Assembly (NCBI GenBank): GCA_964057225.1
Contig: OZ059894.1
Location: forward strand, 16,616,001 to 16,680,000
Source of the DNA: Auanema rhodensis
Lineage: Eukaryota; Animalia; Nematoda
Reading direction: 5' to 3'
DNA length: 64,000 nt
Shown: positions 3,331 through 46,322 of the stretch, piece by piece
Position numbering within the stretch: the first letter of the stretch is position 1
Layout: the number at the start of each line of letters is the position of its first letter
The notes under the pieces: generated by a model
Databases searched by the model: none
Seen by the model: the letters and a program-made list of their open reading frames with translations, nothing else
Told to the model about the DNA's origin: nothing
Position numbers and translations under genes: made by a program

Positions 3331-3501
3331 GACCTATACATATAATACTTTTCTATTCATTCTTTAGATATTTAATATTCTTATTCCATGCCTTTGATTG
3401 AATCGAAGATTCTCATTTATCATTCGATCATTTCAGATAACAACACCTTTCATATAATTCAAATTTTTGGAGAATTGCTTAAAATCTATATAATTAGATA
3501 A

Positions 3502-6500
3502 ATGAAGTTTAGATGTTTAATATTGCTAGTTCCTTTAGCAACAGCACAAATAAGTAATCAGCTCAAACTTGAACTATCTCAAGTATCTCATTCAGGGTTT
3601 TGTGAAGTTTCTGGATCATGCCGACAATGTCCTGATAAGCGTTATACATACTATAGATGTAACTCCCAGGTGCTAAACACTAAAAGAAAATTGTTATTTT
3701 CAAATTTTAATTTATAGAGAGATTGTTTAAATGGTGAAACATGCACAGAAGGATTTTGTTGTCCAAATATTCAAAACCAACCTCCTATGATGACACAATT
3801 CAATGAAAGTAAGTGAAAGTGTGTGATTAGGTAACCTGTCAGAAAATGTTTTGAATTCTCAACTGTTCAATGTCCTTTATTGTCAGTCAAACACTATTTC
3901 ACAGACAAGCTTCTACTAATCTATGTCCTCGCTTAATGCTTATATAACTTCTCAGCTTTCATCGCTACTACCACATCATCAGCTACAATTCACTTATATA
4001 AACCGGATCCCTTTCCTCTGCCGCCTCTTTTTTTAAAAGATAACTCAATTATTGCTCAAAGTAATGATGTGGATGAAAAATGTGGAGATGGTTCAGACTG
4101 GGTAAATCGTTGTAAGAAAGACTCTGATTGTAATGGCTTATTGATATGCATGGACGGTAAATGTTGTCGAAGTAAGTACTTTTTTCCATCTACACTAAAA
4201 AATCTTTTAAAAAAATGTCTTGTGTACTTCATCGTTCTAAAAATAATCTTTTCGTTTCTTTTTTCTATCGGGCAAACGTACAATCCAATCAACCTTTCTC
4301 ATATACACAACAGATTGACTTACCTTGAACATAATGATGGGCTTTCAGCTCTAATTAAGGTCATGTAAACCCCTTGGGAAAAAATATAAAGTTCGAACTC
4401 AATTTAATTCCTTGTACTAGGTTTTGAGTAAGACTTACATTTAGAGATTTGTCCTATTGAAGCAAATAAAAATTCTTGAAAGTTTGGCATTAAGTGATTT
4501 CACCTAGCCTTAAAATGCCGCATTTTACGATCGCTAGAAACGTTTTGTGCCAAAGTCCTTGGCTAAACTAGTTGCACAGTCAACGTGCAGTAGCTTTTGA
4601 AAGAAGAAATATTTTTCAACATCACAAAATTCCTATAAATAACAAGCTATGGGGTTAGATGATCGCATGAGACTTGAGCTGAAAATAGGAGGTTTCTCGT
4701 TGTTATATAAGAATGTTTCAAACATTAGCTAAACCGGATCATTATGCTACCAACATATAACAATTGAAACTTTTTCAAACGTTAAATTTCATTTCATTTC
4801 TCAAATCATAAATAAATGTATAGAAATTTGAAAAAAGAAATTTGTTTTTACAATACAGGAACAACCTTCTAACACATACTGTTCATCCAAAATAGAATTT
4901 TTTATTTTGAAAACGTAATCTTATAAAGCGGTTGCATCAAGAATTTGGAAAACATTCAAAACACGCAACTGGTATTCCCCTTTTTAACGATATGAATGCT
5001 CAAGAACGTAAAAATGTATTGTGATATAGAATTCTTTAACTATTGTATACAAATATTATTCTGATTATATTAGGTTGTTCGCAGAGAAGACGAGAAATAC
5101 TGGATAAATTGGCAGCGACGGAAATTCTTGGACGAGCAATTCCACAATGTACAGAAGATGGAAAGTACTATAGAAACAAGTAAAATCAATTTTAATTTTC
5201 AGCATAAAAACAAAAACATTTGCATATTTAGACAATGCTTTGCTGGATCAATAGAAAACTGCTGGTGTGTTAACGGATCGGGCAAAAGATTATTGCCATC
5301 AGATATAGAATGCCAAACTAAAATTCGAAGAAAAGAACATAATTGGGCTCGCAAGGCACAGTTACTGCGTGATGAGTTAACTAAAAAACAAAAAGTATAT
5401 TCTTAATGGGATTTCATAATGAAATTTGTTAGTTTTTCAGGATAACTGTACACTTGTAAGAAGAGGAAGTTGTCCAAGAATAAGAGCTGCTGCATCAATA
5501 CCTCCAATCTTATGTAACTGTGATGAAGACTGCTACGGCAATAAGAAATGTTGTGAATATGAAGCTAACCGAGTCTGTATTGAACCAGGTTTTCAATTGT
5601 ATTTTCTTTTAACAATGTCTAGAAAAGCTTTTTTAATATGAATATACAGAATAATTACCTCTTGCAGATTAAAATTTGTCTAGCTCTGGTAATAACCCTT
5701 TATTTGTTATAACTTTTAACATTTTCTGTTATCCTGCTTTTTGTATTAACTTCTCCCGCTTTCTATCCATTTTATCCAATTTATATGAATGTGTTTGCTT
5801 TTACTTGCTTGCAACACTTTATTGTTAGCATCTTCAGCTTTGCTATTTTGCCTAATTCTTTTAATAGATATTTCTTAATTATTCGTTATCTTTCAGTGGC
5901 GTCGAACGACGATATTACACTCCTTTGTGCTTCTAATGAACAATTCTCTGCTTGCCATTCTCCGTGCCAGCCAACTTGTGAAGACCCTACCGTATTACCA
6001 TGCCCATCACCAACATGCCAAGCAGGATGTCATTGCCAACCAGGTTAAAATTGGGAATTATGTTTTTTTTTCTAAAAGTGTTCAATCGTTCGTTCTCGAT
6101 CGCATCCTCTGACCTTAGAGACTATATTCTGAGAACTTAATCCGATGTTCTTTAGAGGATTTTATATGTAATTTTCAACTTTTTGCCTAAATTAGAACGC
6201 ATGTATAGTACTTGGCCTTGCCAAGGTTTTGCAGTCATTTTAATCTCCACTAGGGGACATCGCAAAAAACCCGGGTAGATTCAACTCGTTCTTTCAAAAA
6301 CAGAAATTTAAACAAAGATCAAATAGAAAATTATCTTGAAGGTTTCATTCGACGAGATGGATCTCCACATTCGCCATGTATAGCAAAATCATCTTGTGTT
6401 ATGTACGATGTAACTGCTCAATGCTCAGATCAACGACGAGAATATCAAGGATGTGGTTCGTCATGTCCAATTAGTTGTCAAAATAGAAATTCGCCGAGGC

Positions 6501-9500
6501 ATATTCTAAGAAAAATCTTTTAATATCTCATTGATTTTCAGATGTCATGAGCGTTGCGTCTCAGGCTGTTTCTGTCGTGTTCCTTACATCCTTGAGAACA
6601 GTGAAGATCCTTTGAACTCTAGGTTTACTATCAAAATTGAACGAAGTAAATATTTCAACTGTTTTTAGATGCATTTTGGCTTCCGAATGCACTCCAGCAA
6701 CTCCAGTTGTTGCTACAGTTCAGCATAATATGAGGGATTCCTATTCCCAATTTCCCATAGTGCCAGCTCAGAATGTTTGAATAATATTGATTTTTATTTA
6801 AGTACTTGATATCTTAGGCATTCAATCCTTACTCTCAATATTATCCCACCCCAGGTAGTACGGCTACTGTCATACCAAATACAAATCGTTGTGCTGATTC
6901 CTTAAAAAACTATCTAAGCTGCGGAACAAAGTGTCCAGGTCATTAAGAGTCTACGTTATCACATTGAAATATTTCAAGTTTTAGTTGGTTGTAATGCACT
7001 GTCTCCCTCGGTTAGTTGTACACTTCAATGCGTACCTGGTTGTTTCTGTCATGCTCCTTATATTTTATTAGATTCAAATGTGGGTTTTTTTTTAATTCTA
7101 TCAAACAACTCAATTTCAGGATCCACAATCTGCATGTGTTTTACCTCAGAACTGCCCAAGTAAAGAGTCTTCTCCAAAAACATGTCCTGATCCCAGAAAA
7201 GAATATTCTACATGCGGAGCAGCCAGGTACAGAAATATAGTTTTAAATATGCTTAAAATAATACATTACAGCTGTGCTAGATCTTGTTCAAATCTTTTGG
7301 GACGCTGTGAGAGTGGTCATTGTTCATCAGGATGTATATGCCGCGAACCATACGTGTTACAAGTTAGTTCCAGTTTTTGAACGCAATTTAAAAAAATGAG
7401 GTGTAAAGCCAACCTTATAACCGTAACGATATAAAGACCTGTAACGATTGATTGTACTTGACTTGTCAATATCCGCTCGTAAGAACGCCGCGTCGTACAC
7501 TGAAGTAACGCACGGAGCTGGTGAGCGCACAATATTTTTTCAACTCTGCTCTTTTTATAAGACGCAATTTGTCAAAATCGTATAGCATATGGGTTTCACT
7601 AATTAAAAAATGGCATTTGTATATAATTTTGTAAAATTAGTGTACAGAGTACCTTTCTAATGCTAACCGCTTATATCGGACAGCACCAGTCAGAACCCTG
7701 ATCAATCTCCGCCCGTAAGAACGCCGCTACTGACATTATAGTCAGAACGGAGCTGGTGAGCGAACAGGAGGAGATTAAATCCTCTCATTTTTATATGGAG
7801 AGATTTTACTCTTCCGTATAAAGTATGGGTTTAGTATAAACCCAAAGCTTAAAAAATTGTTTGAATTCTTTATAATACTAACCGCAGAACACGGTGCAGC
7901 ACCGGTAAGAATTCGCCGATAATTTCCGCTCGTAAGAACGCCGCGTCGAACACTGAAGTATCGCACGGAGCTGGTGAGCGAATTAAAAGCTTTGCTAAAC
8001 CATTAACTATATTGTCGCTGATCCCCTTTCCCCGTACTTGATATAGGTTTAAAAAAATAAAATAGCATTGCAATATTTCTTTAAAAAAGGTTGGATGTTG
8101 GTAGGATCATTATAATGCTATCCGAGACAAGCGAATGAGCACCGGTAAGACTATCGTTCAATATCCGCTCGTAAGAACGCCGCGTCGAACACTGAAGTAT
8201 CGCACGGAGCTGGTGAGCGAATTAAAAGCTTTGCTAAACCATTAACTATATTGTCGCTGATCCCCTTTCCCCGTACTTGATATAGGTTTAAAAAAATAAA
8301 ATAGCATTGCAATATTTCTTTAAAAAAGGTTGGATGTTGGTAGGATCATTATAATGCTATCCGAGACAAGCGAATGAGCACCGGTAAGACTATCGTTCAA
8401 TATCCGCTCGTAAGAACGCCGCGTCGAACACTGAAGTATCGCACGGAGCTGGTGAGCGAATTAAAAGCTTTGCTAAACCATTAACTATATTGTCGCTGAT
8501 CCCCTTTCCCCGTACTTGATATAGGTTTAAAAAAATAAAATAGCATTGCAATATTTCTTTAAAAAAGGTTGGATGTTGGTAGGATCATTATAATGCTATC
8601 CGAGACAAGCGAATGAGCACCGGTAAGACTATCGTTCAATATCCGCTCGTAAGAACGCCGCGTCGAACACTGAAGTATCGCACGGAGCTGGTGAGCGAAT
8701 TAAAAGCTTTGCTAAACCATTAACTATATTGTCGCTGATCCCCTTTCCCCGTACTTGATATAGGTTTAAAAAAATAAAATAGCATTGCAATATTTCTTTA
8801 AAAAAGGTTGGATGTTGGTAGGATCATTATAATGCTATCCGAGACAAGCGAATGAGCACCGGTAAGACTATCGTTCAATATCCGCTCGTAAGAACGCCGC
8901 GTCGAACACTGAAGTATCGCACGGAGCTGGTGAGCGAATTAAAAGCTTTGCTAAACCATTAACTATATTGTCGCTGATCCCCTTTCCCCGTACTTGATAT
9001 AGGTTTAAAAAAATAAAATAGCATTGCAATATTTCTTTAAAAAAGGTTGGATGTTGGTAGGATCATTATAATGCTATCCGAGACAAGCGAATGAGCACCG
9101 GTAAGACTATCGTTCAATATCCGCTCGTAAGAACGCCGCGTCGAACATTAAAGTATCGCACGGAGCTGGTGAGCGCTGCAGTTTGAAAAATGGTAGAGAA
9201 CTATATAGGCGGCCTCAAATTTTCGCCGTATTTCGTATGGGTGCTAAAGAAATGAAAGGATGAACATGTTGCTAATACATTCGACAGAAGAGTGAAAGAA
9301 AGTGTACTTATGATTATTGAAATAAACTATCGGTACAAACTGTGATTAGGGAAACGACTGCATTTGAATGTAATTTTTAAAATATGATATAGTAACAGCT
9401 ATTCAAACAGTAGTCCGTTCATTCTTATGTCAAGCACTTTTATGTCTCACATCTGCTGTACTGTTGTGTTCTCATTCTCTGTTTTCTTATTCATGAATAG

Positions 9501-11849
9501 TGAAGATCGGTTAAACATTTAGTATGATGTTAATTGTATGATGAACTACAGAGTACTAATTATATATTAATATTAGTTAAGAAGAAGATATGAAAACAAC
9601 GAAGGCTATATTCTTAAATATCTAATTGGTAAGATTAGTTATAATTGTTTCATAAAGAAACTTAATTATCTTGATTAAATAATGGAACTTAATTAACATT
9701 TCATTTTTAATCATAAGCTTAAAGTGAAATAGCTTATATATTGAAAGATAGTTATCTCCGATATTCGATCTGAAAAAGTAGTTTGGGTTATATCGAGTAA
9801 ACAATGTTGATATAAAGTGATTTTTATTGCTATATCCGTTTTATTTGTTTATAATGGCCTTTATTTTGGGAAGGTAAATGTTTGGTAATCAATAAGAATA
9901 AGATATCAAAATGGCCTAATATACGGATACATAAACATTTGATAAATTTATTACGTAAATTAGAAAAAAACAAATAGCAATATACTAGTTTATAAGTTAA
10001 ATTTTTACAGGATTCAAATGATGTGAACTCCCGTTGTGTCCTGCCGTCTGAATGTGAAAGAAAATGTGATGATCCAATGAAGGTTCGATCAAAATTATTT
10101 GTATAAATTTAACTATTCGCATGCTTATTTCAAGGAATTTGTTACATGTGGCTCATCGTGCCCCATGGCTTGCGACAACCGTCATCCCAAAAGCTGTACT
10201 CCGTGTCAAACAGGTTGTTATTGTAAAAATGGTTGGCAAAATGATGATAATGTACTGTTTTAAATATGAATTATTCAAGGTCTGGTGTTCAAAAACTCAA
10301 CCAACTGGCAAAATTCAATTTGTGTTCGGTTAGAAGATTGTCCACCAATCAAAGAAGAACTAATTCCTGAAACAACACCTATTACTACCACTACAACAAC
10401 TACCAGCACTACAACACCGAGAACAATTGAAACAGAAACGACAACCTTTGAAGAAACAACAACATCTTCTTTCTTAGTATAAACGTCACTATCTATGCCT
10501 TTGAATATAGAAAATATGTTTTAGACTACAACCCAAACACTAACTGGATTAATGATAGAGAAAACATTAGCCATAACTCCACCTATTATTGGTATATTTT
10601 ACTTTTGAATATGTATGTTCATCGTGTATTTATTCCAGGCACAAATGGGCTATCTTCTAGTTGCCCCGTTACGACATTAGATGTAGGGGGTAGAAGCTGC
10701 AATTCGGATGATGATTGTCCTGTTCAACAGGTTGATAGTTTTCTTATTCTCACATTTAATAATTTAATAAAAATGTGGTTATAGTGAACATTTAAAAGTT
10801 TTCCAGCATTGTTGTCGAGCTCTCATTGCATCACTTGGGGTGAATCCACAAAGATGTTCTTGCTCAGATCCTCTAGCAGTTTGGAGTGCCTGTGGAAGTT
10901 TATGCCCAGAGTATTGTGGACAACCCTCGGTACTAACTATTTCAAGCTTATAATTCTCTATTATTCCTTCAGATTCCCGTTTGCTCTTCCACGTGTAACC
11001 CAGGCTGTCAATGTGCTCCTGGATATATACGTGCTCGGAACGATGTAGCTGCTCCTTGTATACCACGTGAAGCTTGTGAAAGTGCTAAAGGTTTAGTTTT
11101 TTATTCATGATCTCTTCTCCTACTCCTATTTTACAGAAGCTTTTCAATTAAACGATACGCCAAGAGCGATAATGAAAGAAATTCCTAGCTTAGTGTCTCC
11201 AACACCAAAAGTAACTCATAGATTGGTAAATACAAAATGATAACATGAACTAGTATATTATTACTTTCTAGGTCGCATCTGCTACTTTGGAAGGTCAAAT
11301 ATTATCAGGACGATTAACGTTCAACAAAGACGAAAATGGCCAGTTGAATATAGAAGGTTTTTATCACAAACGTGACTTAACAATACCATTCAAAAAATGT
11401 AGGTAAACTAGATGGATTAGCACCCGGGCGACATGCTTTGATTTTACACAAATTTGGTGATGCCACAAGAGATTGTTCACGGATAGGACCTCCACATCTG
11501 ATTGGCGGTTCATTAGATCCACCAAATCCAGCTATTATCGATATTGAAGGTTTGCTCATCCACCTCTATATATCCGACGGTAACTGCTGTTTTAATCGTT
11601 CCAGGATCCCATGGCGGATTATCTGAGTTTTCATCAAATGTTAATTGGCCTGCTGAAGAAGTTATCGGCCGCTCTGTAGCTATTTATGGGTAGGTCGCTA
11701 TCTTATTTCTAACCGCTTGAATACCTATGATTGTTAATTCTTCAAGAATTTTTTATGTTTTTTTCAGAATAAGCTTGGATGAATGGCTGCGTAGACCATT
11801 AGAAGAACGTCCACTTGCATGCGGTACTGTAGGATTCACTTACGTATAG
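3502..11849 (+). CDS. Multi-exon secreted Cys-rich protease-inhibitor-like protein: signal peptide, thyroglobulin type-1, WAP, about 6 TIL domains, Thr-rich linker, C-terminal degenerate Cu/Zn-SOD domain
   Basis: MKFRCLILLVPLATA signal; IPQCTEDGKY..QC..CWCV thyroglobulin; GSCP..CNCDEDCYGNKKCC WAP; repeated CG/HSxCPxxC...CxxGCxC TIL units; GLAPGRHALILHKFGD...IGRSVAIY...PLACGTV SOD fold; GT-AG short introns; stop TAG 11847-11849. Confidence 0.85.
7399..7527 (-). ncRNA. H/ACA snoRNA, copy 1 (unique 3' hairpin)
   Basis: Hairpin - H box (AUAUUG) - hairpin - ACA+3 nt, then a T7 run; 5' pocket ACCAGCU/CGUUCUU; 3' pocket GUACAAUC/AUAAGG 14 nt from ACA. Confidence 0.75.
7638..7762 (-). ncRNA. H/ACA snoRNA, copy 2 (divergent)
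   Basis: Same 5' pocket; apical stem replaced by CUGAC/GUCAG; H box AGAUUG; ends ACACUA then UUUU. Confidence 0.72.
7855..7980 (-). ncRNA. H/ACA snoRNA, copy 3
   Basis: Canonical H box AAAUUA; 3' lower stem GAAUUCUU/AAGAAUUC; ACA followed by a U run. Confidence 0.75.
8093..8219 (-). ncRNA. H/ACA snoRNA, copy 4 (amplified type)
   Basis: Same architecture; ACAUCC then T6 four nt later. Confidence 0.7.
8332..8458 (-). ncRNA. H/ACA snoRNA, copy 5 (identical to copy 4)
   Basis: 239-bp period repeat unit. Confidence 0.7.
8571..8697 (-). ncRNA. H/ACA snoRNA, copy 6 (identical to copy 4)
   Basis: 239-bp period repeat unit. Confidence 0.7.
8810..8936 (-). ncRNA. H/ACA snoRNA, copy 7 (identical to copy 4)
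   Basis: 239-bp period repeat unit. Confidence 0.7.
9049..9175 (-). ncRNA. H/ACA snoRNA, copy 8 (two substitutions in the apical loop; distinct upstream region)
   Basis: Plus-strand cattaaag vs cactgaag affects only the loop; upstream sequence is unique but keeps TATA and PSE-like spacing. Confidence 0.7.
9200..9243 (-). promoter_or_regulatory. snRNA-type upstream promoter (PSE-like ACCYATAn4-WRTACGR plus TATA-like box) of snoRNA copy 8; equivalents at 7552-7596, 7788-7832 and 8006-8050 (+239n)
   Basis: Four unrelated spacers all place the motif end 52-53 nt and a TATA-like element about 25-34 nt upstream of the conserved RNA 5' end. Confidence 0.7.
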
Positions 11850-17422: not shown

Positions 17423-18829
17423 TAATGAAATTCGTGCAAAAACGCTATATTTTGTAAATTATTACTTTTTCTTTTCTGAAATCTGTATTCCTTCTGTACT
17501 ATATTTGTATTCTTGTTTTGTTTTTAATAAATTTCCTAAATATCCCCTAATTTTCATGTCTAATCTTTGAAATCCCAATGAATCTGACGTTCCCTACGAC
17601 TATCGATATAGTTGAAGTGTTGCAGCGCACTGCGTCAAGCGGCTGCTCTCGACTGCAACATTTTCTTCGAATTATTTGCTTTGGCCGTCCCTCTCAAACA
17701 ATACTGAAGCACACCGGATTAACGCACTTTTCAGTCACCTATCAATGGCCTAATTGAAGAAGTATAGTTTAAAATTTATGGTGTTCCAAAAGGCATCCGA
17801 ATTTTCAACCGTGACATAAGGCCTTAGATACCAAATGCAAAGATCAAGAAACCCCGGGGGTGCGAACACATACAATTCCTCATTGATGTCGTCTCTATGA
17901 TCACCCAGTATACCACCAAATGTCATACAGTCACCACAGCAGCTATACGACCGATATCCTCCCATCACACATGTGTCAGTCGGATTGTCAACGAACATCT
18001 GTCAAGGCTAACTAAGATACCAATCTTCGATTGCTACATAATGGGATCCGACCCCGACCCCATCTTCGGACGGGAGGGGGACGGACGGACGGACGGACGG
18101 ACGGACCGACGGTTTCCACCATCGTCGTGTTCGCCAGCACCACGACATCAACATACTCGCGGCGGCGACCGCGGACCCCGACCTTGCGCAGCGACGATCG
18201 ATGATGACCGCTCTTCGTATTTGAAAAAGGCGCCAAAACTAGTGCGACGTCGAGTTGGCGCCCTTTTCTTTGTGTATGTTGACTGCTGTGCTGTACTGCC
18301 CAACATTTCTCATCGCTGTGCCGCCGTCGACATTTTCTTTTCTTATTTTTCTTAGCAACTGTCTTTTGCTATTCTATTCGAAGATTCCCTCTATTTCTGT
18401 TTAGTGGTGTAGTCCACGATGATGTTTCGTTATTGCTCGTTGCTTTCTATTTGTTTGTTGTGTAATAATGTGGCTGCTCTGCGGTGCTTCTGCGGCTGCC
18501 ATCCCTTTCTCTCATTCGATGATATTTCTCTCTTGTCTAGTCACTGTCTCACGATTTTTGCTTTTCTGATTGTATGGGGCTGTTCTAAGAATTGGCTATC
18601 GGCGGCTGCTGTTTGTTACACTGCGTATAAGACGAATATCCCTCCCCTTGTGTTGTGCTATTATCGTTTTGAGTTTAATTTGCCTTAGGTTTCTCGATTG
18701 CATAACAAAGTTGCAAGGGTGCAATACATTTTATTTGAACCCGGGATAATTGAGAAAGTAAATGCAATAAAAAAAGCGGGAGGGTTGGCTGTAGATTTGT
18801 AGATAGAAGTTTGGCAGTAGGCGATTGCT

Positions 18830-20232
<1,403 letters not shown>

Positions 20233-20532
20233 CTAAAGATACAACGCGTTCTCCGAATTGCTCGAATGCACCCGCTCCGCCTCTTATCGCCGCCCTCGCA
20301 AAAGATGCCAGTTGAGAACACCCTCGTATTTTCCGAGAACCAGCTAGGCATCTGTCGCCTATCCCTTTTTTACAGCTGATAGAGAGATCTCTTTTCTTAC
20401 AATTATATCTCTTCTTTTTGTCTTATCCCTCCTACACTTTATGATGTTTCGCTTTTTCTCTATGATTTCTCTGAATTCTCCTTTGACTGTTTGTATATAT
20501 ACGCCGATAATAACTGTACTGTTCATCATTAA

Positions 20533-21852
<1,320 letters not shown>

Positions 21853-23825
21853 TTCCCAAAATTCACTGCTTATTATTCGTTACGGATTGGCATTTTACTG
21901 TTTAACTTTTCTTGTAAATCCTGAGCATAATAAACCATTCCGATGCTTATATTATTGTTTTTAATTTGTATTGGGGGAGTGTTGATACTCCATTGCTCAT
22001 ATCTTGACGCAGACATGTGGAGTGGGCGTGGCCTATGAACCGTGTTTATGGAAGAGTATATGTAAAGTTGGTTGCCTGTGGCGATCGCTTAGTGTCTTGT
22101 CGAATACTAGGAATAATGTGTAATATCCTGCCAAGCAGATCTGATCCTGTTCTAAGAATTCACAGATGATTTGTTTCGGGTGGAACCGACAAACATCTAT
22201 TACAGCAAACTCTGCCACATGGAGTCTTTTTTCTAATGAAATTCTACGGGGGAGCAAAACGGAGTAGATACTGGGAAAAGCTTGAAAAACCTACAACAAT
22301 AGTTTCTAGGAATAATGTAGGGATGAGGGATGCATTTCTTGATCTAGACCACAGATTAGACAGATGATTGTCATAATTTAACTAGATCAGTCAACGAATA
22401 AGCAGGCTTATATACAACAGATTAACTCTTCTGAAATAAAAGCAATAGAACCCTTTTACATTCTAACGACAATGACTTATCGAAACCTTAACAGAGCTGC
22501 AGACCAAATAGTAGAGTAGATACCGTTTTGCAAACAGATATCTGTTTAAATGTAGCGCTCTGTTCACGGAACAACTACTGAACAACTTCTTAAATAAATT
22601 CGTCCTCATTCCTCTCCAGTCTTCCAGACATTCTGAGAATTGTATCTTACTTTCCACTTGTCATCTTTTTCCAATTTTTCTCTCACACGCAATCATTTTT
22701 TGCTAATCATTCATATGGTTAAATGAAACGTAATATTTATTATATTGCTCTATTTTTAGGAATACTTCAGTTTTTCATAATAAAATATAAATTCATTTTT
22801 TTTCGTATATGTAAGAACACTATATTGATGGCATTTCCAGATTGAACTTTGATATCACATGTTATATACAAGATATTCGTCCTTGTTAAAAACGGAGTGG
22901 GAAAGATGTTTAGGTAAACGTCCCCAATCACTCTTTGTTCGTCCGTTTATTCTTCATGGTAGCTCTGTAATATTTGCCATGAGCGTCTTTTTTCGTTGCG
23001 TTCATGCTTCTCAGAACCTCGCGAGATTATCATTGTTTGTTCGCGGTCTACACACTAGGCTTCCCACTTGCTACTAACATCATCACGAATAATTGAAGAG
23101 GAGTACTTTTTGATTCGTTCTTATACTATACGATATTTTCTTGTATTTCTGTACGAAGTTTATGAATTGGTTCGGTTGTCACAACTGTAGATTTTCTTCC
23201 ACGTAGGACCTAAAATTTGAAACAGTCATGTTGTCGTTTGTGCGGGAGGCTGACGCTTCGTCATACGTGCGCGGTACCACGAAATTGAAAATGATTCATT
23301 CAACAGCGTTCTTGTATTTCGGATAATTTTTCTCTCTTTTGCGATATTAGTCGCATTCATGCCAATGTCAGGCTGATCAGTTAAAGTGATTCCTTAAAGA
23401 CAGGCGCTCACTCGAGCTATCTTTCCTTCTCTTGAACTTCTTTTCTGTTGTATTCTTTGACTATTTTCTAGTGTAAGCTGGGATTGTGGCATCAAAGTGG
23501 GCATGTGTTCTGTGATTGTCTGAGCTCTCCCAAGCAACATCATCACTATACTTCTCCGCTCTCGGTGCCTGTGCTGTGTAAACCCCCCCGGTCCTCCGCC
23601 TACACCCGTCCTAGCCGACCCACTCATGCACCACTCCTTCCGATGCCGGGGACTTAAATGTCGCACCACCCAGCTCCTCTGATTAGTCTTCAGTTGTTAG
23701 TGTTACATGTTCGTCGGTCGTGCGCGGTTCGGCTCAGTTTGACTTAATATTTCGTTATGCTTTGTCTTATTTCTATGTTAGCAATTTTATTTATTATTAC
23801 TGTATAACTGTATAGGAGTCAATAA

Positions 23826-25139
<1,314 letters not shown>

Positions 25140-26572
25140 ACAGCTCACTTTTTATCACTTATCATATTCCTGCCATTCACTTTGTCCATATTGTTTTCTG
25201 AAGAATTCTAGCAGAAGTTCGTATAAACATGTCGGATGTACTTACAATTTCAGTTATGACATATCATTTTTTTACACGATTGGTACAATCTTAAGTAGTT
25301 TACACAGGGGGGAAGGGTATGTTTTCAATGCAAGACTAGGTTTCGAGACAATATTATTCATTAATCTCAGCACTCTGAGCTCTTGCGTTTGTTTAATTGC
25401 GGTTAAAAAAGTTTCTTTGTTTTGAAATCCACTGTGCTACAAACGGTTTCTGATCTTTATCTTGATCATTTCCTAGAAACGGAATATAGAAAAAATTTTG
25501 GATTGCTAATTCAAAAAAAATGATCGGCTATTTAATCTAGAACTGAGGAGATTGATGCGGGTTTGTCCATTTATTTGTGTAAACTGTTAATGTAATTCTG
25601 ATGTTTCAGTTAGAAAAGACTCAATGATATTACATTAATTGTTTTGTAGTATGTATGAATCATATTTCTTCAAATAAGCAAAAATAAACATAAAATTGTG
25701 AAACATAGGATTCATGTGATTCATCCGGAATTCTTGTTTCGTGAGCCATCTCTGTACACTGAATGTTGACATGGTATTGACGTACAAACTGCATAAACTA
25801 TGATTTCTTCATTCCCGAGAAATTTTTCAGAATTTCTAACTTTACATTTTGGGAAACGATTTCAAACATTAGTAAATCAGATCAAGATTATTTTTTTTGT
25901 TTTATTATAGGTCTTCACGAAGGAAAAATTATACAAAAATGTATAGTCATAAAATTTTCTAGTTGGAAGAAAATATATTTAATTTAGAGATAAGACCGTG
26001 TCTTTACATCAAAATCATTTAGAGCATTATACAGACACGACAATTTTCTGAAACATTAATAAAATTGAAAATTAGTCCATGCTTCGTTATTCGACGTACA
26101 GTACTGCAATGTTACCAGGATTGATATAGTCTGATGTTCATATTTTTCTTTGTCACATTCCCTGACTGATCTTGGTTTTGAAAGTGTATGATGCTTTAAA
26201 AAACGTAGTTGAAGTAAGTTAGTCAGTAAAGTATTTTAACATCTTATTCTTCTAGTTTCCTATCCAACCAAATTAATATTAGAGAATTTAATTGATAGTT
26301 AGAACAAGCGAACTTTGATTTTTGATGGTCCATTTAAATATTTAGCACTACTAGTTCCGCCGTTGCACTCATGGTATTAAAAACGATCCTAACAAGCTAT
26401 GTAAAGCTTTTGAACGCCACACAGAAAATGTGTCAATAGCGGGAATGCGCATAGTATGTTAAATTTAAAAGAAATGAAGTAATGCAAATGTAAGTATCGT
26501 TATGCTGTACAAGTTTGATTTAGAATTTCATAATTTGTTTCTGAAAGATTCTTTTAAATATGTTTTCAGAAC

Positions 26573-38668: not shown

Positions 38669-38869
38669 AATTTCCTATTTGTTTTAAACTGCAATGATCG
38701 GATATTAGTTCATTAGAATGTTATTTTTTCTACAATTTTAAAAATAAAGTTCAATTCTGAAGAGTGTAAATGGTGAATATTGTGTAGTCAACGTGAAGTC
38801 GGAAAAGCTGATAACGCATTGGTCTTTTTAAAATTTCTACAAAGTCTAGAATATGATCATCCAACCCGT

Positions 38870-38889
38870 GCTTCCGTGGCGCAATAGGC

Positions 38890-38925
<36 letters not shown>

Positions 38926-38942
38926 GAGCCCACCCGGGAGCG
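38870..38942 (+). tRNA. tRNA-Asn(GTT)
   Basis: GCTTCCG/CGGGAGC acceptor stem; TTCGG-CTGTTAA-CCGAA anticodon arm; GGTTCGAGCC B box; downstream T run. Confidence 0.97.
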
Positions 38943-39023
38943 AAATATTTTTTTCAGTTTTACAATATTATTTTTTAGTATTTAAGTTTCTTCTGTCTCG
39001 TTTATAGATTCTTAGAACTTTTT

Positions 39024-39949
39024 AGTAGTATGTCATAAGTTTTCGCTGGACGGTCATTTTGTCCATTTTCCAGTTTTCAACACTTTTTGACTATTTTAAT
39101 GCACAAAATCATCAAAAATCTGTCTTAACTCATCGAAAAACCGTCATTTCTGAAAAAAATGATAGTTTTAGTCCTTTGGTCATTCTGTAAAAACACAGTA
39201 GTTTCAAAGAATAAATACAGTAATAAATGACGAAGCTAAAAAAAGTTCTCTCTTTCTTCTTTAAAAATGGAGGTGTTAGTTCGCACCGGACGCATGCCGC
39301 ATTTTTTTGTGGCTCGTACTGAAACAAAGCAATTAAACCAATTCTCTGATTGAATTAACTTACTCGGTCATCTGGACACGCGATTCCTGATATCGCCAAT
39401 ATGCAGTCGTAACTGATAATCTTCGTATCCGGATAATGATCAGCTACTTCGGCGATTGGCATGTTCTGGGGATCATTGAAGGCGAAGCTTTTCTTGGCAA
39501 CCGGCACCCCGAGGAAGTGGCCAGCATAGTTAAATGAGTGCGTTTACCTTCAGAAGAATCTAGATTGACAATACCTATTTCTCTTTTCTTAATTAGTGGT
39601 GGCAAAGTGAATCTCATAAAGATTCCTCCGAAATTCTTGATTTCTAGCTTTTCTGCAAGATTCATAAGACCGAGATTTGTTAGTGGTTTCAGATTCTTAC
39701 TTAACTTGTTCATTTATTAGGATTAATTTATTCGAAAATGTGAAAAATCTTGAATTTGAGAAAAGAGAGGTACAGGGCAAAATGACCAAAGGACTGGACA
39801 GTCCAAAATTATCATTTTTTCAGAAATGACGGTATTTCGATGAGTTAAGACAGATTTTTGATGATTTTGTGCATTAAAATAATCAAAAAGTGTTGAAAAG
39901 TGGAAAATGGACAAAATGACCGTTCAGCGACAACTTTTTACATACTTCT
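39024..39949 (-). mobile_element. Non-autonomous mini-Maverick/Polinton (926 bp)
   Basis: About 160-bp TIRs starting AGTAGTATGT / ending ACATACTTCT; 6-bp TSD CTTTTT (39018-39023 and 39950-39955); internal adenain-like protease fragment. Confidence 0.85.
39533..39713 (-). pseudogene. Truncated Maverick adenovirus-type cysteine protease (N-terminal ~60 aa, ending at the catalytic His)
   Basis: LTNLGLMNLAEKLEIKNFGGIFMRFTLP...EIGIVNLDSSEGKRTH matches the Polinton PRO pattern F.G.F....LP...I.NLD.S...GTHW. Confidence 0.8.

Positions 39950-40472: not shown

Positions 40473-46322
<5,850 letters not shown>

What the first reader, a model, noticed from the sequence alone, without database searches (positions are those of the whole stretch)
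7399..9243. Intronic 'satellite' reads as an antisense array of eight H/ACA snoRNA genes with an invariant 5' guide for the LSU peptidyl-transferase region
Seen: on the minus strand all eight units give 125-129 nt RNAs with hairpin - ANANNR box - hairpin - ACA+3 nt, then oligo-T. Hairpin 1 (GCUC/GAGC, CCG/CGG) shows a compensatory change (A-U to U-A in copy 1), a GU wobble and a fully replaced apical stem in copy 2, while the internal loop ACCAGCU / CGUUCUU is invariant and starts 15 nt before the H box. Established: that spacing defines a pseudouridylation pocket. Its complement GGGAACG-U-G-AGCUGG is the conserved LSU rRNA sequence whose U is yeast Psi2944 (snR37) and human 28S Psi4491 (ACA10/SNORA10); these assignments are recalled from memory. 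Inference: functional guide RNAs that repeat masking would hide, antisense to the host gene and therefore not processed from its intron.
Basis: partly seen in the sequence, partly recalled or inferred. Interest (0 to 1): 0.88.

Follow-up and report, generated by a model that had tools for sequence, protein, structure and literature searches.

The report
Antisense snoRNA gene array in intron
What looks like a 239-base satellite in a nematode intron is a row of eight small nucleolar RNA genes on the opposite strand, each with its own promoter-like element and predicted to modify a conserved ribosomal RNA site; it is a known kind of gene in an uncommon layout that a related worm shares.

Summary
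Confirmed. Eight minus-strand H/ACA-type genes (7399-9175) lie in intron 7363-10010 of a + strand TIL/WAP/SOD-like gene, spliced out in two probable RNA runs. They resemble C. elegans ceN36-1 (Rfam E 4e-6, but 43 bits against a cut-off of 48). The invariant 5' pocket pairs 7+6 bp with a proxy nematode LSU at the U equal to human Psi4491 / yeast Psi2944.

New here: (1) every unit has a PSE-like box at -67/-68, a TATA-like box near -32 and a T run, so the genes are probably independent U6-type Pol III units; (2) Auanema sp. JU1783 carries a larger array in the same intron, with compensatory stem changes; (3) six copies carry a second guide, conserved in JU1783, for the yeast U990-equivalent site; (4) four identical inner copies look like unequal-crossover chimaeras of two neighbours.

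Corrections: the H box is ANANNG in 7 of 8; ACA lies 1-7 nt before the T run; only four distinct 3' halves exist. Expression and polymerase are unproven. Scan notes on this stretch had flagged the promoter and varied 3' hairpins; notes elsewhere in this genome describe U3, U6, U1 and other snoRNA arrays. Verdict: uncommon variant of a known kind.

The parts
7363..10010 (+). Host intron (2648 bp, GT..AG) of a WAP/thyroglobulin/multi-TIL gene with a C-terminal SOD-like domain
   Evidence: frame continuity; splice joint 7362 to 10011 in runs X12 and X14; Pfam; orthologue annotation
9227..9242 (-). PSE-like element of gene A1 (consensus ACCYATA-N5-TACG), at -67
9201..9207 (-). TATA box of gene A1 (TATATAG), at -32
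9049..9175 (-). snoRNA gene A1: H box 9120-9115, ACA 9054-9052, T6 from 9044; predicted guides for LSU U2944-equivalent (5' pocket) and U990-equivalent (3' pocket)
8810..9004 (-). Inner copy A2: PSE-like 9004-8989, weak TATA (ATATAG) at -32, RNA 8936-8810; chimaera of B's promoter and 5' end with A1's 3' half
8571..8765 (-). Inner copy A3 (identical 239-bp unit), RNA 8697-8571
8332..8526 (-). Inner copy A4 (identical 239-bp unit), RNA 8458-8332
8093..8287 (-). Inner copy A5 (identical 239-bp unit), RNA 8219-8093
7855..8048 (-). Gene B: PSE-like 8048-8033, RNA 7980-7855, canonical H box AAAUUA, both guides kept
7638..7830 (-). Gene C: PSE-like 7830-7815, TATAAAA at -33, RNA 7762-7638; replaced apical stem; 3' pocket changed at three positions, no target found
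7399..7594 (-). Gene D: PSE-like 7594-7579, TATAAAA at -32, RNA 7527-7399, T7 from 7396; best ceN36-1 match (43.1 bits); distinct 3' hairpin, no target found

Best explanation
A cluster of independently transcribed ceN36-like box H/ACA snoRNA genes sits antisense in the intron. Shown: anatomy, antisense position, conserved locus and covariation. Inferred: SNAPc and TBP bind the PSE-like and TATA boxes, Pol III starts about 30 nt below TATA and stops at the T run, the 3' end is trimmed to ACA+3, and the RNA assembles with dyskerin/NOP10/NHP2/GAR1. The 5' pocket then directs pseudouridine at the LSU U equal to yeast 2944 / human 4491 (peptidyl-transferase region). The 3' pocket of types A and B directs it at the yeast U990-equivalent (helix 38). 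Four older genes (A1, B, C, D) existed. Unequal crossing-over between the near-identical 5' hairpins of A1 and B, between +29 and +56, made a chimaeric 239-bp unit that was then amplified four times.
For: Rfam ceN36-1 hits, E 3.8e-6 to 1e-3. 9 of 18 hairpin-1 pairs show two-sided changes while the pocket is invariant or stays complementary. LSU duplex 7+6 bp at 15 nt from the H box, top hit in all window types and in both intact-pocket JU1783 types. Second guide is 6+6, 5+6 and 6+10 bp in types A, B and JU1783 copy L006:4923. Promoter motif precedes all 8 units and occurs nowhere else in 64 kb on either strand (about 0.02 expected per strand for a stricter form), and 12 or more units in JU1783. 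Orthologous host gene and intron with the same antisense array in Auanema sp. JU1783, where only the RNA hairpins align and the spacers do not. Inner copies match B at +26 and +28 and A1 from +57 on. In nematodes Pol III snRNA loci have a TATA box and Pol II loci do not (PMC6436959). C. elegans ceN36-1 has no TMG cap (PMC2200864). One 165-nt contig from a probable RNA run covers a whole type A unit, 8785-8949 (weak).
Against: No stranded small-RNA data. The one intronic contig in a probable RNA run is unstranded, of low depth and could be DNA or pre-mRNA. Rfam scores are under the family cut-off. The rRNA is a proxy from an unidentified rhabditid-like contaminant (L003), not this species. The promoter pattern was fitted on these units, and I could not compare it with this species' U6 PSE. 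Type A has a weak 3' lower stem, and its best fold pairs the H box with the ACA box (1.2 kcal/mol better than the open form). Inner copies have a weak TATA. Single-pocket P values are modest.
Confidence: 0.8

Rival explanations
1. Same snoRNA genes, but transcribed by Pol II from a C. elegans UM1/PSE-type promoter, or as one long antisense precursor cut into single RNAs.
For: UM1 (PSE) precedes 11 C. elegans snoRNA loci and is mostly Pol II (PMC2527325). Inner copies have only ATATAG. The X12 contig runs 20 nt past the start of the T run.
Against: A TATA-like box sits at a fixed -32/-33 in all units of both species, and every unit of this window ends in T4-T7. UM1 loci are mostly TATA-less and capped. 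A polycistron would not need a promoter per unit.
Confidence: 0.1
2. Only some copies work. The four identical inner units are neutral or poorly functional products of recent slippage, or their number is an assembly artefact; C and D have a dead or orphan 3' pocket.
For: 100% identity of four units. Type A z = -0.6, with box-sequestering fold. Scan notes report many tandem small-RNA arrays in this genome (unchecked). Contigs cannot give copy number.
Against: The type A 3' pocket is conserved in JU1783. JU1783 amplified a different unit independently. This rival is compatible with the main reading for A1, B, C and D.
Confidence: 0.3
3. A satellite or SINE-like repeat with chance box-like motifs.
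For: Tandem Repeats Finder calls a 239-bp repeat of 5.3 copies at 99% identity. No Rfam hit at gathering level.
Against: Homology to a cloned H/ACA RNA, compensatory changes, conservation of pockets but not spacers across species, and no dispersed copy in the window or in the six non-syntenic nematode loci searched.
Confidence: 0.03

Closest known systems
C. elegans ceN36-1 H/ACA snoRNA (Rfam RF01627)
   Same: About 130 nt, CGCUC/GAGCG lower stem, CCAGCU / CGUUU pocket, same non-canonical H box (model consensus AAAUUg), at least two family members in C. elegans (PMC1474057), no TMG cap (PMC2200864).
   Different: Below the gathering score (43.1 against 48). The 3' hairpins of A, B and C do not align to the model. 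Eight tandem copies. I could not find the promoter class or locus of C. elegans ceN36.
Yeast snR37 (25S Psi2944) and the human guide for 28S Psi4491 (SNORA10/ACA10, name from memory)
   Same: Same predicted target uridine in the peptidyl-transferase region.
   Different: No Rfam match to either family, so these are target-site counterparts only. The second pocket points to the yeast snR49 site U990, which is not listed as modified in human.
C. elegans UM2 (tRNA-like A/B box leader) Pol III snoRNA genes
   Same: Independent, intron-nested, T-terminated snoRNA genes whose expression does not follow the host (PMC2527325, PMC1474057).
   Different: No A/B box leader upstream here. The promoter is an upstream PSE-like box plus TATA.
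U6-type (type 3) Pol III genes; C. elegans UM3 / sbRNA loci
   Same: Upstream bipartite element, TATA-like box near -30, oligo-T end.
   Different: UM3 was reported only at sbRNA loci. I found no report of a guide snoRNA array with this promoter in the searchable literature.

Membership tests
Box H/ACA guide snoRNA | Hairpin-hinge-hairpin-tail fold, 120-150 nt | tested here: met
   clear for B, C and D; for A only when the boxes are held open (1.2 kcal/mol above the best fold)
Box H/ACA guide snoRNA | H box in the hinge (ANANNA, or the ANANNG variant of the cloned ceN36-1 family) | tested here: met
   ANANNA in 1 of 8, ANANNG in 7 of 8; Rfam ceN36-1 consensus reads AAAUUg. Strict ANANNA fails in 7 of 8.
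Box H/ACA guide snoRNA | ACA box 3 nt from the mature 3' end | tested here: inconclusive
   ACA follows hairpin 2 in all copies, 1-7 nt before the T run; the true 3' end was not mapped
Box H/ACA guide snoRNA | Bipartite pocket pairing around an unpaired U-N, 14-16 nt from the box | tested here: met
   7+6 bp at 15 nt (5' pocket); 6+6 at 16 nt and 5+6 at 14 nt (3' pocket of A and B) on proxy LSU L003
Box H/ACA guide snoRNA | Stable RNA bound by dyskerin/NOP10/NHP2/GAR1, and target pseudouridine | not testable with these tools
   only one unstranded 165-nt contig
Rfam RF01627 ceN36-1 | Score at or above the gathering threshold of 48 bits | tested here: not met
   43.1, 40.0, 34.1 and 32.4 bits; filed as ceN36-like homologue, not as a formal member
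SNORA10 / snR37 sequence families | Rfam covariance-model match | tested here: not met
   no such hit at E up to 10 over 7300-8260
Type 3 (U6-like) Pol III gene | TATA box near -30 and T4+ terminator | tested here: met
   -32/-33 in all 8 units (weak ATATAG in five), T4-T7 after ACA
Type 3 (U6-like) Pol III gene | Upstream element identical to the species' snRNA PSE, bound by SNAPc | not testable with these tools
   conserved box at -67/-68; no U6 locus of this species was available
UM2 tRNA-leader snoRNA gene | Box A and box B upstream of the snoRNA | tested here: not met
   no box A or box B match in the 100 nt upstream; only a lone B-like GTTCGA inside hairpin 1
Intron-processed snoRNA | Same strand as the host pre-mRNA | tested here: not met
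   host intron is GT..AG on +, genes are on -

The most novel reading that the evidence does not exclude
The locus is an active nursery for new guides. Each gene has its own compact U6-type promoter, so unequal crossing-over inside the shared 5' hairpin swaps 3' hairpins and promoters, and duplicates then rewrite their pockets. Types C and D here, and three further H/ACA-like genes with other pockets in the JU1783 intron, would then guide new, lineage-specific pseudouridines on rRNA, snRNA or mRNA.
Probability: 0.2. Interest if true: 0.6.

Novelty: new variant of a known kind. Interest (0 to 1): 0.36.

Why it matters
It shows that functional-looking guide RNA genes can be hidden by repeat masking. 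It gives a probable example of H/ACA snoRNAs under a U6-type promoter, whereas the described C. elegans Pol III snoRNAs use a tRNA-like leader. It catches snoRNA duplication, hairpin shuffling and pocket divergence at one locus in two related species, which makes guide evolution testable by one pseudouridine map. The predicted main modification itself is ordinary and conserved from yeast to human.

Tried and rejected
Rfam at gathering level found only two tRNAs in the window. A representative-protein search with one SOD-like exon did not find the host orthologue; synteny came instead from a calreticulin exon in two steps. No synteny was seen around crt-1 in C. bovis, C. auriculariae, two Mesorhabditis species or Pristionchus, and no array there or in the Ostertagia locus. 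The species' own rRNA was not available. Two viral-contig scans for nematode rRNA were blank. An alternative 3' target for type A near yeast U1124 needed a 13-nt distance and is not shared by B or JU1783; rejected. Loose ends in run X10 at 7280, 8105 and 9509 first suggested a mobile copy of the array, but all fall at GATC and fit Hi-C-type ligation junctions; rejected. Run X11 was not a related species. Deng 2006 and Zemann 2006 were not held. The bacterial promoter scan is irrelevant. The host model was searched by exon only.

Full report
Organism and setting. The window holds calreticulin and an actin cluster. Its calreticulin is 89% identical to that of Auanema sp. JU1783, the best of 15 compared, and the order TIL/WAP/SOD gene, calreticulin, unnamed gene, actins is the same there. 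The source is therefore a rhabditid nematode, probably a close relative of Auanema sp. JU1783 (inference). The array lies in intron 7363-10010 of a + strand gene with thyroglobulin, WAP and several TIL domains. The flanking exons join in frame into a TIL domain, and contigs of two runs guessed to be RNA skip exactly 7362 to 10011 with GT..AG ends. The units are on the minus strand, so they cannot be cut from the host pre-mRNA.

Observation. Eight units start at 9175, 8936, 8697, 8458, 8219, 7980, 7762 and 7527; a covariance model of hairpin 1 finds no other copy in the window. They fall into four types by their 3' half: A (five copies), B, C and D, 43-66% identical to one another, while the 5' halves are 79-100% identical. 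Lengths are 125-129 nt. The H box is ANANNG in seven copies and ANANNA in B. ACA lies 7 (A), 1 (B), 4 (C) or 5 (D) nt before a run of 4-7 T. B and C fold better than shuffles (z -2.9, -3.5). A and D do not (z -0.6, -1.1), and the best fold of A pairs the two boxes with each other, 1.2 kcal/mol below the open form.

Family. Rfam at gathering level misses the array. At E-value level the region 7300-8260 gives four hits to RF01627 ceN36-1, a C. elegans H/ACA snoRNA (43.1-32.4 bits, E 3.8e-6 to 1e-3, cut-off 48). The model has the same lower stem, nearly the same pocket and the same H-box variant. I call the units ceN36-like homologues, not formal members. C. elegans ceN36-1 is listed as an H/ACA RNA without a TMG cap (PMC2200864 supplement).

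Targets. The species' rRNA was out of reach, so I used nematode-like rDNA contigs as proxy: L003 for most of the LSU and L001 for the 18S 5' half. The 5' pocket's best site is GGGAACG-U-G-AGCUGG, 7+6 bp with the pocket 15 nt from the H box. P against shuffled rRNA is 0.013-0.02 for the structure-defined pocket in the window types, 0.04 in a freer scan and 0.03-0.10 in the most permissive one. The human RNase T1 fragment 4466-4484 in PMC6182160 matches L003 just upstream and places this U at 4491, a listed pseudouridine. It is 21 nt after the Um-Gm-Psi triplet, which in yeast gives 2923+21 = Psi2944, guided by snR37 and assigned to the peptidyl-transferase centre (PMC5699541, PMC8307265). The name SNORA10 rests on memory only.

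The 3' pockets of A and B (UUACCG / UAUAA) both rank the same LSU site first, CAGUUAUA-U-U-CGGUAA (6+6 and 5+6 bp; P 0.02-0.04 for A and 0.03-0.09 for B). It lies 14 nt before the U that corresponds to human Psi1731, which I take as yeast Psi1004 from sequence context recalled from memory. That makes it yeast U990, a snR49 site in helix 38 that is not conserved in human. This numbering assumes no indel over the 14 nt. The 3' hairpin of C is homologous but has three pocket changes and no site; D has a distinct hairpin and no site among the sequences tested.

Conservation. The orthologous intron of JU1783 carries an antisense array of at least 11 ceN36-like copies. Between the species only hairpin 1 and the 3' pocket region align; the spacers do not. 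Across seven sequences, 9 of 18 predicted pairs of hairpin 1 have two-sided changes, while the 5' pocket strand is invariant and the 3' strand stays complementary. The most upstream JU1783 copy has the A-type 3' pocket and pairs 6+10 bp with the same U990-equivalent site (P 0.01). This is independent support for the second guide. JU1783 amplified a different 278-bp unit and also holds three H/ACA-like genes with other pockets. Six other nematode calreticulin loci showed no array.

Promoter. All eight units have ACCYATA-N5-TACG at -67/-68 and a TATA-like box at -32/-33, although the upstream regions are otherwise only 40-60% alike between types. A pattern of both boxes hits these eight places and nothing else on either strand of the window, and 12 places in the JU1783 intron. 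The pattern was fitted on these units, but a stricter form is expected 0.02 times per strand. No tRNA-like A/B leader is present. In C. elegans, UM2 leaders drive most Pol III snoRNAs, PSE/UM1 loci are mostly TATA-less and capped, and the PSE-B plus GTATA motif UM3 was seen only at sbRNAs (PMC2527325). In Plectus, Pol III snRNA loci have a TATA box and Pol II loci lack it (PMC6436959). The simplest reading is a U6-type Pol III promoter per gene. That is inference: I had no U6 locus of this species to compare.

How the array arose. The four inner units are identical. They share the whole upstream region and positions +26 and +28 with B, and everything from +57 with A1. An unequal crossover between the 5' hairpins of neighbouring A1 and B, between +29 and +56, gives exactly this chimaera, and further slippage multiplies it. 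The 93-97% identity of hairpin 1 among A1, B and D, including an apical stem that varies freely in C and in JU1783, suggests gene conversion as well (inference).

Expression. No run on record as RNA holds the stretch. In run X12, guessed to be RNA, the only intronic contig is 165 nt at 8785-8949 and covers a whole type A unit. It is unstranded and shallow, and a random piece of that length from the repeat would cover the RNA body about one time in six. This is weak support. Copy number cannot be read from contigs.

Comparison and verdict. The genes work like ordinary dual-pocket H/ACA guides, and the main target is conserved from yeast to human. What differs from described cases is the combination: tandem array, antisense intron position, U6-type promoter per copy, and visible hairpin shuffling, kept at one locus in two species. 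I found no paper on Auanema snoRNAs or on such promoters at nematode guide snoRNAs, but two key C. elegans papers were not held, so the promoter may already be known for ceN36. Unchecked scan notes list tandem U3, U6, U1 and other snoRNA arrays in this genome, so amplification of small-RNA genes looks common here. Verdict: real, a new variant of a known kind, interest 0.36.

Noticed in passing
L006 (Auanema sp. JU1783) minus strand 4741-4090 and about 2490-2370: Three further H/ACA-like genes (starts near 4679, 4438, 4211) and a truncated-looking copy near 2424, each behind the same PSE/TATA-like element but with different pockets. The 4679 5' pocket may pair with LSU GGGAAG[U]CGGCAAA (P 0.04-0.11); the others have no convincing target in the proxy rRNA.
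   Followed up: partly
L006 minus strand 129-2233, 3430-3901: At least eight near-identical 278-bp ceN36-like units with an AUA box and another 3' hairpin. The array runs off the locus and spans an assembly gap. The copy at 3838 has a mutated pocket.
   Followed up: partly
window 11403-11549: The host gene's C-terminal SOD-like domain has HALILH where a Cu/Zn SOD has HAFHIH, so one copper-ligand histidine is replaced; probably not a catalytic SOD.
   Followed up: no
window 18829-25140: Actin gene cluster with two copies 99.8% identical over 1.3 kb (20542-21852, 23829-25139) and an inverted third; syntenic with JU1783 downstream of calreticulin.
   Followed up: no
window 38868-38951 and 42072-42155: Two identical tRNA genes (anticodon GUU, Asn), 3.2 kb apart; an inverted repeat 39027-39169 / 39805-39946 lies between them.
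   Followed up: no
window 9703-9743: A 41-nt piece of the intron matches a high-depth contig at about 80%, probably a remnant of a dispersed repeat.
   Followed up: no
L001 3051-3369: A group I intron (Rfam 122.7 bits) in the LSU of a metagenome contig whose downstream part is nematode rDNA. The flanks near the intron differ more from L003 than the rest does, so a chimaeric assembly is likely.
   Followed up: partly
L002, L003, L005: Three bacterial genome assemblies contain eukaryotic LSU rDNA contigs, nematode-like by the probe used: contamination.
   Followed up: no
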